63,937 bases of DNA. Origin: Zootoca vivipara. Its lineage: Eukaryota. Under the pieces are notes generated by a model. It did no database searches, was not told the origin of the DNA, and saw only the letters and a list, made by a program, of their open reading frames with translations. The DNA is taken from assembly GCF_963506605.1 (NCBI RefSeq), contig NC_083287.1, forward strand, positions 20,646,064 to 20,710,000. Direction: 5' to 3'. Position 1 is the stretch's first letter, and every line of letters begins with the position of its first letter. Of the stretch, positions 1,008-4,524 are shown piece after piece. Position numbers and translations under genes: made by a program.

Positions 1008-3263
1008 TATAAGCAAAAATCTTGCTTTTGGTTGCCACCATTTTATTTCGCTCACAATGCCCTTTGAGCAATGGTATATTAGCATGTGATATCATTCTGA
1101 GAGTAATTGTGGGCAAAATTTATTCGCTTTAAAATTTGGCTGAACCTTTTCCTGTGATAAGTTTCAGTCCATTCTTAATATGACCAAGGCTAGAAAAACC
1201 ATTTACCAAGAGCACAGTGGATTTTAGGAACCTAAGAAATCAGGTACTTGAATTTTTCCCCTAATTCTGACACACACACACAGACACACACACACACACA
1301 ATCTACCGTATTCATTGATTAATACCCACAAATATTCTGGTCCTCAGTCTAGAACTTGCTTATAATAGTTTTACTGAAGTCTATCCTAGATCATTTTGAA
1401 AAAACACACAGTGTTTTCATTTTTATGTAAGATATATCTATGAAAAGCTTGAAAAGTATATGAGAAAAAGAAATGTTTACTCATCTGAGGGTTTCATCAT
1501 CATTTACCCAGAGGCCAGTCTACATTCAACCAAGTCATAGGAAGCAAAATCAGCCTGCTAGTGTGCCTCAAGGTGTTTCCATATGTTAGTGCCTCGGGTT
1601 TGAAGAAGTAGAACTGGAAATGTTTTGAGTCTCTATATAGAACATTATTTGCCTCTCTCCCTACATCCTTTCTCATCTCTTCCATGCCTTTGGCTTGTAA
1701 TGTGTTTCTCCACTGGAATAGTCACCCACAATAAATGGAGCTTGTAGATATAACTGGAAATATATTTGGCTGATGATTCCCCACTCTCTCTCACACACTA
1801 ACTGACAACTGTGCATATCAGGAAACACACTTGTTTGCTCTAACTATGCAGCAGCTGATCAGTAAAGAAACAGAACCCTTAATTGCTACTTAGGGTTTAA
1901 GCCATCATTCATTCATTCATTGCTGGAACTATGAACTATTCATATGTTGCCACAGTATGTTACTTACACAAGAGTGACAGTGAAGGAAGTAAGAGCTAAG
2001 ATGCCTCACAGATATAGACACTGGGGGATTAACATGTCCTCTTCATTAATATATATGTACATAAATTAATGTTAGAGTATTGAAACTAGTTTGCATGAGA
2101 TCTGGACAGATTCCTTCTTTGAAGAGTGCTCAGAAAATGTCTTTAATATGTTGCAGTCTGCTTTCCAAGTTAACATTGTTCTGTTGTTGTTGTCGTGGCT
2201 GTTGTTGTTATATAAAATATGTTTTATTATGAAATGCACAACAAATCCTCTAAGAATATTGGTCTAGAAACTGCACATTGTTTTATAGATTGTCTTCTAT
2301 TTTCTGATAGTCTAGATCCTTATCCTTCAATTTTACTTGAAATGGTACATTTTAAATCAGTTGGCAGCCAATCGTAACAGGCTAGTACTGGTCACAGTTT
2401 CTGTGTGGCAAATGGTATTATTTTCAGAAATACTTTACTGTCATTGATAAAGGCTTCTCATCACAGTGCTGTCATAAAGACCACCTTCAAGAGTTTTGTA
2501 CCCAGACCCTGTTAGTTCCTCATCCTATGGTCTCTGTGTGTGGTATGGGAGTTGTACGGTTGGGGAAAGAACAGCGCTGTCCAGGGTAATAAAGACTGCA
2601 GAGAGGATAACTGGGTGCACTTTTCCCAGGGCACAGTGTAAATACAAATTTTAAGTTTCCCATATTCCTGATTGAAAATTGCCATGTGTACTTCTGATTG
2701 TGATATGTACTCTGCACTAAAAATGTATTAAAATCTGCTCCAAAGTGACCTGATCCTTAAGTTAAGCAAAATTCTGTTACCTGTTTGAATTATTCACATT
2801 TAAGCAACTTTTCAAAAAGTTGCTTATATTCCATTCTTCATTCTAATCCTTTAGTTATGGGGAGTAGCAGAAAAATGTAGGCTACAAGTACACATTAAAA
2901 ATTGCACTCAGTAGCTACTTTCCTATTGTACCTGATGTTGAGCATATATTTTCAAGTCAAGTCTACCTCAGCTTACAGGTTGAAACACTTTAAAAAATAA
3001 AAGCTGAGCTACATAGGATACTGAATTCTGTGTCTTAGTGCATAGCCATTATTATAAAGAGGATGATACAGAAAAGAGGTGAAGAGTCATAATTCAATGG
3101 TAAAGTTCTGCTTTGTATTTGTGAACTCCCAGGTTCAATCAGCTCTTAAATAATTTCAAGTAATTGATGCTGGGAAAATCCTCTACTTGAGAACCCAGTG
3201 TTAGACATTGTATGGACTGGGCTAGTTAAATAGCATAAGAGAAGAGAGAACACCTTAAATGTT

Positions 3264-3480
3264 CTGGTTACAGGTAGGTAGCCGTGTTGGTCTGGATCGA
3301 AGTAAAATAAAAAAATTCCTTCAGTAGCACCTTAAAGACCAACTAAGTTTTTATTTTGGTATGAGCTTTCGTGTGCATGCACACTTGGTATCTGAAGAAG
3401 TGTGCATGCACACGAAAGCTCATACCAAAATAAAAACTTAGTTGGTCTTTAAGGTGCTACTGAAGGAATTTTTTTATTTT
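3264..3480. mobile_element. Penelope-like element terminal-repeat remnant in inverted arrangement
   Basis: Perfect 85-bp inverted repeat (3302-3386 / 3398-3482) flanked by a 12-bp direct repeat ACCTTAAATGTT (3252-3263 and 3481-3492). Carries a minimal hammerhead motif typical of PLE pLTRs. Confidence 0.8.
3385..3428 (+). ncRNA. Minimal type I hammerhead ribozyme motif (PLE-associated), predicted cleavage after C3421
   Basis: TTGGTAT-CTGAAGA-A-GTGTGCATGCACAC-GAAA-GC-TC-ATACCAA: 7-bp stem I, intact CUGANGA and GAAA core, palindromic stem II, palindromic AGCT stem III, UC cleavage site. Confidence 0.85.
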
Positions 3481-3512
3481 ACCTTAAATGTTGAATCTTT
3501 ATTTCTCTGAAT

Positions 3513-3553
3513 TTCCCTGAAGAAAGGCCAGTAGGGTCTGAAATGCATCGGAA
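3513..3553 (+). ncRNA. Second, more degenerate minimal hammerhead motif, predicted cleavage after C3549
   Basis: TTCC-CTGAAGA-A-AGGCC-AGTAG-GGTCT-GAAA-TGCA-TC-GGAA followed by AATAAA at 3555. 4-bp stem I, 5-bp stem II with one G.U pair, palindromic ATGCAT stem III. Confidence 0.65.
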
Positions 3554-4524
3554 TAATAAATATGACTTTTGCCCCACACCATTGTTTTTTGCTGCTACTT
3601 CCTGTGGATAGAAGCATGGTCTGCTTCCCTATAAGGCAACTCATATATTTACATGGTTTGAAATTAATTAATAGTTTTGCTACATCAGTGTTCTGGGTAA
3701 TAGGACACAATCCTTTTCAGCAAATAAATTGTATTAAGCAATGAAAATTGGGGATAAGGGCATCTTTAGTTTCATAAGTTATTGAAGAAATATTCTATAC
3801 ATTATTTGAGGGAAAAACTATCAACTACAGAGTCTTTTACTGAATAAAACACAGTGAAATGAGAGCTGGAGTTGATTCCTTAATTACCAAAGAAAATAAG
3901 CTTTCTAGGAAGCAATAATGCATACTTAACCTACTTTCTTGGTTCTAATCTATTTATGCAATTCAAGAGGTTATTCTTGTACTTTGTACAGGAAAGGAAG
4001 GAAAGTATATCTCTAAATTGTTGCTTAATACAAACATCACAAGGAAAAAGAATTCAAAGGCTTCAAGAAATAGTTGTGGCAACTGCAGTACAAGTGTATA
4101 AATTATCATTTCACTCATTTTTCTTCCTTCCTTCTCCCTCCAACTCTTACTATAATTAGCCAGCATTAACAGCAAATGTTTGCTTTGGTTAAATTATTCA
4201 GAACATTTATTTTACTTGTCAAAGGTTAGATCAGGTTGTTGTTTGAACTGGTAATTAAATGCAGGCTAATACACTATCATATTTATATGCACTGTAAACC
4301 CTGTTTCCTTCTCCTTCTGTATAATTTTATAACGTTGCGGGTTGACATTTAGAAAGACTTTTCTACTCAAAGATGTATAAACCAAGCCAAGGAGGCAGAC
4401 TTCGTTGGTATTCAAACTCCCAGTAAGTCGTGATCATGTGTAGTTGGAATTTGACATAAGGACAATATGTTAGCACGAGGTTCTTAGGTTAAATAAATAA
4501 ATAAATAAATAAATATGGGGGGGG

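What the first reader, a model, noticed from the sequence alone, without database searches (positions are those of the whole stretch)
3385..3560. Two different hammerhead ribozyme motifs in tandem on the + (TBC1D5 sense) strand
Seen: two complete CUGANGA / stem II / GAAA / UC cores with a closing stem I, 85 nt apart and in the same orientation. HHR-A is 3385-3428 (stem III palindrome AGCT). HHR-B is 3513-3553 (stem III palindrome ATGCAT, followed by AATAAA). Known: Penelope-like elements carry minimal type I hammerheads that lack a stable stem III and cleave mainly as dimers via palindromic stem III sequences. Inference: a younger PLE remnant inserted ~30 bp upstream of an older, different PLE-derived hammerhead, suggesting target preference or a composite unit. 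Double cleavage would release a 128-nt RNA (3422-3549), formally similar to a retrozyme monomer, from what is probably TBC1D5 intron. Activity is unproven, and the two stem III palindromes differ, so an A/B heterodimer is unlikely.
Basis: partly seen in the sequence, partly recalled or inferred. Interest (0 to 1): 0.8.

Follow-up and report, generated by a model that had tools for sequence, protein, structure and literature searches.

The report
Two unrelated Penelope hammerhead relics, adjacent
Two small hammerhead-ribozyme motifs really do sit 84 bases apart on one strand, but they are leftovers of two unrelated Penelope-type jumping-gene families brought together by one recent insertion, and nothing suggests they cut RNA here or act as a unit.

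Summary
Both motifs exist exactly as described: A at 3385-3428, B at 3513-3553. They are the only two minimal hammerheads in the window. Shuffles give 0.011-0.015 per window, and none of 1500 carried both the bulged base and the palindromic helix III.

Motif A lies in the + arm of a 217-bp fold-back insertion (3264-3480). This has a perfect 85-nt inverted repeat, a 38-nt one-sided tail and a 12-bp target duplication, the textbook footprint of a Penelope-like element (PLE). Contigs of two related species carry the empty site, so the insertion is recent.

Motif B lies in an older, low-copy repeat (3485-3571, about 9-14 paralogues per genome). It is present at the empty site in both relatives and is unrelated in sequence to A. 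The same hammerhead type, with compensatory stem changes, lies 1.2 kb downstream of a GIY-YIG endonuclease ORF on a metagenome contig.

The composite or retrozyme reading fails. Copies of the A family do not continue into B. A's core is buried in the 85-bp hairpin, at a cost of +44 kcal/mol to free it. B is a lone copy of a dimer-dependent type. RNA reads show no transcript over B or the flanks and no ends at 3421/3422.

The TBC1D5 context was not verified. This scan has already logged many such Penelope hammerhead insertions in this genome. The finding is an ordinary example of a known kind.

The parts
3252..3263 (.). Left copy of the 12-bp target-site duplication ACCTTAAATGTT
   Evidence: Direct repeat D2, 100% identical to 3481-3492. 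Relatives' contigs keep a single copy: 3251 is joined directly to 3481 (X16 record 16).
3264..3301 (-). 38-nt one-sided 'tail': the element's 3' end, present only on the left (minus-sense) copy
   Evidence: It lies outside the inverted repeat but is high-copy element sequence, with depth of 10^6 in bins 3255-3296. This matches the 30-40 bp one-sided tail of PLE insertions (PMC8557442).
3302..3386 (-). Left arm: minus-sense PLE end piece, 5'-truncated inside the hammerhead. It starts at AA+stem II and lacks the CUGAAG part of the core box.
   Evidence: Inverted repeat I1, 85 nt, 100% complementary. No hammerhead is found on the minus strand.
3387..3397 (+). 11-nt loop of the fold-back. It holds the 5' strand of stem I and CUGAAG of hammerhead A.
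   Evidence: Family likeness of the + copy begins at 3388 (loose ends: 103, 57 and 101 contigs).
3398..3482 (+). Right arm of the inverted repeat (its last 2 nt overlap the right TSD copy); the plus-sense 93-nt PLE end piece, 3388-3480, lies over the loop and this arm
3385..3428 (+). Hammerhead A: complete minimal type-I motif, predicted cleavage after C3421
   Evidence: Folds as a hammerhead in isolation (-12.7 kcal/mol, z -2.7). Forcing its helices in the hairpin context costs +43.8 kcal/mol.
3481..3492 (.). Right copy of the target-site duplication
3485..3571 (+). Older low-copy repeat unit that carries hammerhead B
   Evidence: Extra contigs about 85% alike lie over exactly this span (X14 records 14 and 15, X16 record 22), internal to contigs of 509-1583 nt. 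Depth at 3507-3548 is 7-22 times the single-copy level (7-10x in X1, 14-22x in X14, 9-11x in X16). The unit is present at the orthologous empty site in both relatives.
3513..3553 (+). Hammerhead B: complete minimal type-I motif, predicted cleavage after C3549
   Evidence: The family majority has G3525 and A3527, which keep stem II paired. Against the PLE-linked hammerheads of L001 and L002, 4 of 9 pairs change on both sides and 100% of cells stay paired.

Best explanation
Two unrelated relics of Penelope-like-element (PLE) minimal hammerheads were brought side by side by one recent insertion.

Shown:
- An older low-copy repeat (3485-3571) with hammerhead B was already at this site in the common ancestor of three related species.
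- In the lineage of the sequenced animal, an abundant young PLE family then inserted a 217-bp ORF-less fold-back at the repeat's 5' edge. The fold-back consists of a minus-sense 123-nt end piece with a 38-nt tail, joined head-to-head to a plus-sense 93-nt end piece. It is flanked by a 12-bp duplication of an AT-rich target.

Inferred:
- The fold-back arose by reverse transcription primed from both cut DNA strands, as shown in vitro for an Anolis PLE.
- The two cDNAs were joined at the self-complementary stem II sequence GTGTGCATGCACAC.

Consequence: only the + copy keeps the whole ribozyme core. In any + strand transcript that core is base-paired into a perfect 85-bp hairpin. B is a single copy of a type that needs a second identical copy to build helix III. 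Neither motif is therefore expected to cleave at this locus, and no 128-nt RNA is expected.
For: - Both motifs and their rarity by chance.
- Fold-back, tail and target duplication. The architecture matches PLE insertions described in PMC8557442. Cutting and extension of both strands, and preference for AT-rich targets, are reported in PMC11167929.
- Empty site in organisms B and C, filled junctions in organism A, millions-fold depth for A, and a separate family of about 9-14 contigs for B over 3485-3571.
- No likeness between A and B outside the core: (392 of 500 shuffles score as well or better).
- B has the PLE hallmarks listed by Cervera & de la Pena 2014: a base between A9 and 10.1, short helix I, and a palindromic helix III.
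- The same hammerhead type occurs in L001 and L002 with compensatory stems. In L002 it lies downstream of a eukaryotic GIY-YIG endonuclease ORF.
- Occlusion of A: MFE -156.6 kcal/mol for the hairpin, +43.8 kcal/mol to force the hammerhead.
- No RNA over B or the flanks, and no read ends at the cleavage site despite about 1600-1900 family reads. This agrees with PMC11167929, which also saw no RNA-seq ends at a lizard PLE hammerhead site.
Against: - B's link to a PLE in this genome is indirect. I could not read its paralogues or find an RT/EN next to any of them.
- B's 10.1-11.1 pair is A-U here and G.U in the family majority, not the G-C typical of PLE hammerheads.
- B's fold is thermodynamically unremarkable (z -0.3) and lies 0.7-4.8 kcal/mol above the MFE in context.
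- The metagenome hits were found with a pattern that fixed the core and two stem II pairs, and their flanks are not demonstrably homologous to B.
- The RNA evidence comes from one run, about 6% of it read, tissue unknown.
- Co-transcriptional or protein-assisted folding cannot be excluded by thermodynamics alone.
Confidence: 0.8

Rival explanations
1. Motif B is a chance hammerhead look-alike inside an ordinary non-PLE repeat, so only A is ribozyme-derived.
For: B folds no better than shuffles (z -0.3). It lacks the G10.1-C11.1 pair. Rfam is blank. It has no demonstrable flank homology to A or to L001/L002. At about 0.011-0.015 chance motifs per 64 kb, a genome of gigabase size, as lizard genomes are (size not measured here), would hold a few hundred.
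Against: No shuffle in 1500 combined the motif with the bulged base and the palindromic helix III. The core is ancestral to a repeat family, and the only two majority differences keep stem II paired. The identical architecture, with compensatory stems, is linked to a PLE endonuclease in another organism.
Confidence: 0.12
2. A and B form a functional composite: a retrozyme-like unit whose double self-cleavage releases a 128-nt RNA from the host transcript.
For: Same strand, same orientation, both cores intact, and the length 3422-3549 is formally retrozyme-like.
Against: A is absent at the orthologous site of two relatives, A copies do not continue into B, and B paralogues lack A. The units are unrelated, whereas retrozymes are tandem repeats of one unit of 150-450 bp (PMC7229834). 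A is sequestered by +43.8 kcal/mol. No heterodimer is predicted. There is no RNA over B or the flanks and no ends at the cleavage site. Single PLE min-hammerheads are inactive in vitro and dimers only weakly active (PMC4209133).
Confidence: 0.03
3. The adjacency is not coincidence. The young PLE was directed to the edge of the older PLE relic, as homing to pre-existing PLE or pLTR sequence. This rival concerns only why the two are adjacent and is compatible with the best explanation.
For: The target duplication (3481-3492) overlaps the first 8 nt of the B repeat unit, whose left edge is 3485 in three independent paralogue contigs. PLEs are reported to insert into or next to pre-existing PLE copies (PMC6765202) and to nick AT-rich DNA in their own pLTR or elsewhere (PMC11167929).
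Against: This is one locus. A and B share no sequence beyond the core. The target is simply AT-rich, which is the general preference. Essentially none of the very many A-family copies continue into B-like sequence. The chance of landing within a few nt of the edge, given a nearby insertion, is only about 5-10%, which is not compelling.
Confidence: 0.12

Closest known systems
Metazoan PLE minimal type-I hammerheads (min-HHR; Cervera & de la Pena 2014, PMC4209133; dimer cleavage per Lunse et al. 2017 as summarised in PMC6765202)
   Same: Both motifs share the CUGANGA/GAAA/UH core, the unpaired base between A9 and 10.1, a short helix I of 4 bp, a helix III reduced to one pair with a palindromic loop (AGCU; AUGCAU), and dispersed single copies from truncated elements.
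   Different: B has A-U (family majority G.U) instead of G10.1-C11.1, and its PLE parent in this genome was not found. Helix II is 5 bp in both, against the 6-8 bp often reported.
Canonical PLE insertion architecture: inverted 5'-truncated copy plus one-sided 30-40 bp tail within one TSD (Craig et al. 2021, PMC8557442; two-strand cutting and extension, Frangieh et al. 2024, PMC11167929)
   Same: The A insertion has an 85-nt perfect inverted repeat, a 38-nt tail on one side only, a 12-bp TSD and an AT-rich target.
   Different: It is a miniature of 217 bp with no ORF. The junction falls in the self-complementary stem II of the ribozyme.
Non-LTR retrozymes of animals (Cervera & de la Pena 2020, PMC7229834; Li et al. 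2026, bioRxiv 10.64898/2026.07.22.740005)
   Same: Type-I hammerheads on one strand, bracketing a short AT-rich segment. Retrozymes are themselves derived from PLE pLTRs.
   Different: There is no tandem repeat of a single unit. The two hammerheads and their flanks are unrelated and of different age. The 128-nt length is below the usual 150-450 bp monomer. No RNA was detected.
Earlier notes of this scan on the same genome (e.g. s1-851049, s1-850915, s1-853475)
   Same: Same abundant lizard PLE family, same fold-back mini-insertions, and the same recurrent start of the ~92-93-nt hammerhead end piece.
   Different: Here a second, unrelated hammerhead-bearing repeat lies 32 nt downstream of the insertion.

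Membership tests
PLE minimal type-I hammerhead (min-HHR) | Conserved catalytic core C3U4G5A6N7G8A9 ... G12A13A14 ... A15.1 / U16.1 H17 in type-I order | tested here: met
   Both A and B have it. For B the family majority differs only at 3525 and 3527, outside the core.
PLE minimal type-I hammerhead (min-HHR) | Extra unpaired nucleotide between A9 and 10.1 | tested here: met
   A3399 in A and A3524 in B (ex=1 for both). The feature is as listed in PMC4209133.
PLE minimal type-I hammerhead (min-HHR) | G10.1-C11.1 closing pair of helix II | tested here: inconclusive
   A meets it with G3400-C3413. B does not: A3525-U3539 here and G.U in the family majority. Of the metagenome relatives, L001 has G-C and L002 has G.U.
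PLE minimal type-I hammerhead (min-HHR) | Helix III reduced to 1-2 bp with palindromic 15.x-16.x/loop 3, allowing a dimer | tested here: met
   AGCU in A and AUGCAU in B.
PLE minimal type-I hammerhead (min-HHR) | Location in the pLTR or end region of a Penelope-like element | tested here: inconclusive
B: no PLE ORF link in this genome. The same hammerhead type lies 1.2 kb downstream of a GIY-YIG EN ORF in L002.
PLE minimal type-I hammerhead (min-HHR) | Self-cleavage, mainly as dimers | not testable with these tools
   Indirect evidence only. No read ends at 3421/3422 among about 1600-1900 family reads, and none over B.
Rfam hammerhead families (type I/III, HH9, HH10, II) | Score at or above gathering threshold of a hammerhead covariance model | tested here: not met
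   No hammerhead match even at E<=10. The models also miss the PLE-linked L001/L002 motifs, so this does not argue against the minimal class.
Non-LTR retrozyme | Tandem repeats of one 150-450-bp unit, each with the same hammerhead | tested here: not met
   A and B units are unrelated. A is absent in relatives, and no recurrent A-B arrangement is seen. The spacing is 128 nt.
Non-LTR retrozyme | Expression as monomeric linear or circular RNA | tested here: not met
   Zero reads on 3507-3750 and on 3150-3254 in RNA run X21, of which about 6% was read. No joints of a circular form are listed. This is weak negative evidence.
PLE insertion footprint | Inverted 5'-truncated copy, one-sided 30-40-bp tail, TSD, AT-rich target | tested here: met
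   85-nt inverted repeat, 38-nt tail at 3264-3301, and 12-bp TSD ACCTTAAATGTT with 8 of 12 bases A/T. Empty site in two relatives. Description in PMC8557442.

The most novel reading that the evidence does not exclude
The young PLE did not land here by chance. Its RNP recognised the AT-rich 5' edge of an older, unrelated PLE hammerhead/pLTR relic, since the TSD overlaps the first 8 nt of the B repeat unit. That would mean cross-family homing of Penelope elements to relic pLTRs.
Probability: 0.1. Interest if true: 0.4.

Novelty: new member of a known kind. Interest (0 to 1): 0.15.

Why it matters
It matters little beyond annotation. The locus is a clean, datable example of a PLE fold-back mini-insertion, with the empty site preserved in two relatives. 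It also documents a second, low-copy hammerhead type (AUGCAU helix III) in this lizard genome. Its practical use is as a caution: adjacent hammerhead motifs on one strand are not evidence of a retrozyme, and a fold-back insertion can bury an intact ribozyme core in a long perfect hairpin. That hairpin, if transcribed, is a more plausible source of biological effect (dsRNA) than the ribozymes.

Tried and rejected
- Rfam at gathering and at E<=10 gave no hammerhead hits. The many sub-threshold miRNA-precursor matches only reflect the long hairpin.
- Sensitive blastn of the A and B units against the window found no other copies of either.
- Local alignment of the full A unit against the pre-insertion B locus showed no likeness beyond chance.
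- Flank homology between B and the metagenome PLE contigs gave P=0.013 (uncorrected) for one of four tests and nothing for the other three, so it is not established.
I left it unverified and did not spend a large protein search on it.
- A findings search by sequence for B was blank.
- Lunse et al. 2017 (PMC5785218) is not held, so I cite it only through the review PMC6765202.
- I rejected the A:B heterodimer. The palindromes allow 2 bp, and the cofold energy equals the sum of the monomers.
- I rejected a minus-strand hammerhead. The left arm lacks the CUGAAG box.

Full report
OBSERVATION

Reading 3200-3760 and scanning the whole window on both strands with a minimal type-I hammerhead descriptor returns exactly two hits. 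The descriptor required stem I of at least 4 bp, CUGANGA, 0 or 1 extra base, stem II of at least 4 bp, GAAA, a loop of 0-8 nt, and UH.

- A, 3385-3428: UUGGUAU / CUGAAGA / A / GUGUG-CAUG-CACAC / GAAA / GC / U C| / AUACCAA.
- B, 3513-3553: UUCC / CUGAAGA / A / AGGCC-AGUAG-GGUCU / GAAA / UGCA / U C| / GGAA.

Dinucleotide-preserving shuffles of the window give 0.015 (400 shuffles) and 0.011 (1500 shuffles) such motifs per window. None of the 1500 shuffles gave a motif that also had the extra base after A9 and a palindromic helix III, and both real motifs have these two features. Rfam has no hammerhead match at the gathering thresholds or at E<=10. It also misses hammerheads of the same class that sit in a PLE, so this blank says nothing about the minimal class.

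WHAT A IS

A is not a free-standing motif. 3302-3386 and 3398-3482 are an 85-nt, 100% complementary inverted repeat with an 11-nt loop. ACCTTAAATGTT occurs at 3252-3263 and again at 3481-3492. The inserted DNA is therefore 3264-3480 (217 bp), and it has three parts:

- a minus-sense end piece (3264-3386) whose outer 38 nt (3264-3301) have no partner in the other arm;
- one junction base (G3387);
- a plus-sense end piece (3388-3480).

An inverted 5'-truncated copy, a 30-40-bp 'tail' on one side only and a target duplication are the described footprint of Penelope-like elements (Craig et al. 2021, PMC8557442). An Anolis PLE protein cuts and extends both DNA strands and prefers AT-rich targets (Frangieh et al. 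2024, PMC11167929). That gives a mechanism for head-to-head copies. That the junction formed at the self-complementary stem II sequence GTGTGCATGCACAC is my inference.

Laying public data on 3150-3750 showed four things:

- The inserted sequence, tail included, is a very high-copy family in three related species. Summed contig depth is 10^5-10^6 against about 35, 11 and 48 for the unique flanks.
- Family likeness of the + copy starts at 3388 in 103, 57 and 101 contigs. Only GUAU/AUAC of stem I is therefore element sequence. Pairs 3385-3387 with 3426-3428 are by-products of the fold-back.
- In organism C a single contig joins 3251 directly to 3481. In organism B a contig does the same with a few extra bases. 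Both relatives thus have the empty site with one copy of the 12-mer.
- In organism A the contigs cover both junctions.

The insertion is therefore younger than the split of these species, which differ by roughly 5% (from 31-mer sharing). Earlier notes of this scan call the animal a lacertid-type lizard and describe many such insertions. I did not check the species.

WHAT B IS

B lies in the old flank, 32 nt beyond the insertion. It is not unique sequence. In all three DNA runs, depth over 3507-3548 is 7-22 times the single-copy level (7-10x in X1, 14-22x in X14, 9-11x in X16). Contigs of 509-1583 nt match only 3485-3571, at about 85% identity, in their interior (records 14, 15 and 22). This indicates roughly 9-14 paralogues per genome. 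The orthologous contigs of both relatives carry B.

The only differences held by a majority of paralogues are A3525>G and G3527>A. These turn stem II from A-U, G-C, G.U into G.U, G-C, A-U. The core and both helices are therefore ancestral to the family. Some paralogues have U instead of C at 3549, which is still an allowed cleavage nucleotide. The table of differences was capped, so minor variants may be hidden.

The A unit and the B locus share nothing beyond the core: local alignment scores 10 against a shuffle mean of 10.8.

B has three of the four hallmarks that Cervera & de la Pena (2014, PMC4209133) list as arguing against random origin of PLE min-hammerheads. It has the base between 9 and 10.1, the palindromic helix III, and membership of a family with pair-preserving variation. 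It lacks the fourth, the G10.1-C11.1 pair.

A scan of metagenome contigs for CTGAAGAA-NNNCC-N5-GGNNN-GAAATGCATC found two related contigs, L001 and L002, from one sample. Both form stem I GCCC/GGGC and stem II GAGCC/GGCUC (GGCUU in L002). Against B, all 27 cells pair and 4 of 9 pairs differ on both sides. Controls with the 3' partners slid by 1-3 columns pair 0-58% of cells. Two of the stem II pairs were fixed by the search pattern, and there are only three sequences.

In L002 a + strand ORF (961-1482), 1.2 kb upstream of the hammerhead, is a eukaryotic GIY-YIG endonuclease. The evidence is Pfam PF01541 at E 4e-4, just under its cut-off, the motif VIYLIRCPCGMGYVGQT, and nearest Atlas clusters that are all eukaryotic GIY-YIG. 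That is the layout of a PLE 3' end.

This hammerhead type is thus PLE-associated elsewhere. Flank homology between B and these contigs is not established. I conclude that B is most likely (about 0.85) a relic of an older PLE or PLE-derived family. Chance is the main alternative.

DO THEY WORK, ALONE OR TOGETHER?

- A + strand RNA over 3290-3570 folds into the perfect 85-bp hairpin (MFE -156.6 kcal/mol, z -24). Forcing helices I and II of A in that context costs +43.8 kcal/mol. With the right arm alone the hammerhead fold is the MFE. This agrees with the other first-stage note on this stretch (s1-851049).
- B's fold is 0.7-4.8 kcal/mol above the MFE in context and no better than shuffles in isolation. 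Its helix III is one pair, or a 6-bp intermolecular AUGCAU, so it needs a second B copy, and the locus has none.
- No A:B heterodimer is predicted. The cofold energy equals the sum of the monomers, and AGCU against AUGCAU offers only 2 bp.
- In RNA run X21 (raw reads, about 6% of the run), no read lies on 3150-3254 or 3507-3750. The roughly 7000 reads on A come from other copies: 95% run on into unlike sequence. No position shows a pile-up of read starts or ends, including 3421/3422. Frangieh et al. likewise saw no RNA-seq ends at an Anolis PLE hammerhead site and found cleavage dispensable for insertion in vitro. Single PLE min-hammerheads were inactive and dimers only weakly active in vitro.
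- The arrangement is not recurrent. A-family depth falls from about 4x10^5 (3465-3485) to a few hundred beyond 3486. The listed B paralogues show no A piece.
- Retrozymes are tandem repeats of one 150-450-bp unit (PMC7229834). Here the two units are unrelated and of different age.

The evidence favours it.

WHY THEY ARE ADJACENT

The TSD (3481-3492) overlaps the first 8 nt of the B unit. PLEs are said to insert into or beside earlier PLE copies (PMC6765202). One locus cannot distinguish that from an AT-rich target hit by chance. I give targeting about 0.1.

NOT SETTLED

The TBC1D5 and sense-strand label is open. The exact ends and parent of the B family are unknown. Whether the insertion is polymorphic within the species was not tested. 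The N stretches of the window were not examined or filled.

VERDICT

This is a known kind of element, already logged many times in this genome by this scan, and of low interest.

Noticed in passing
window 3276-3464: RNA reads of the A family (run X21) are strand-biased, and the bias flips between the arms: about 2.4:1 first mate on - over the left arm, and 2.5-4:1 on + over the right arm. Family transcripts therefore come mainly from one strand of the element. Which strand depends on the library chemistry, which is unknown.
   Followed up: no
window 3388: Hundreds of family contigs in three species lose likeness exactly before 3388 (GTAT|CTGAAGA). Joints such as 3294->3388 show other copies built as 'tail + 93-nt piece'. 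This is a recurrent 5' boundary four bases upstream of the core box, not at the predicted cleavage site.
   Followed up: partly
window 3302-3482: The perfect 85-bp hairpin draws dozens of sub-threshold Rfam miRNA-precursor matches, which reflect the generic long hairpin only. If transcribed it would be a long dsRNA, a possible Dicer or ADAR substrate. The A>G differences seen in RNA are also present in DNA contigs, so they are family variation and not editing.
   Followed up: partly
L002 961-1482 and 2666-2706; L001 1304-1346: Metagenome sample ERZ1739169 holds a eukaryotic Penelope-like fragment. It has a GIY-YIG endonuclease ORF followed 1.2 kb downstream by a minimal hammerhead with an AUGCAU helix III. 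A second, 76%-alike copy lies on another contig. The host organism is unknown.
   Followed up: partly
window 3485 / 3481-3492: The left edge of the older B repeat unit, the same in three paralogue contigs, falls inside the target duplication of the young insertion.
   Followed up: partly
window, whole: 793 N are present in the window.
   Followed up: no
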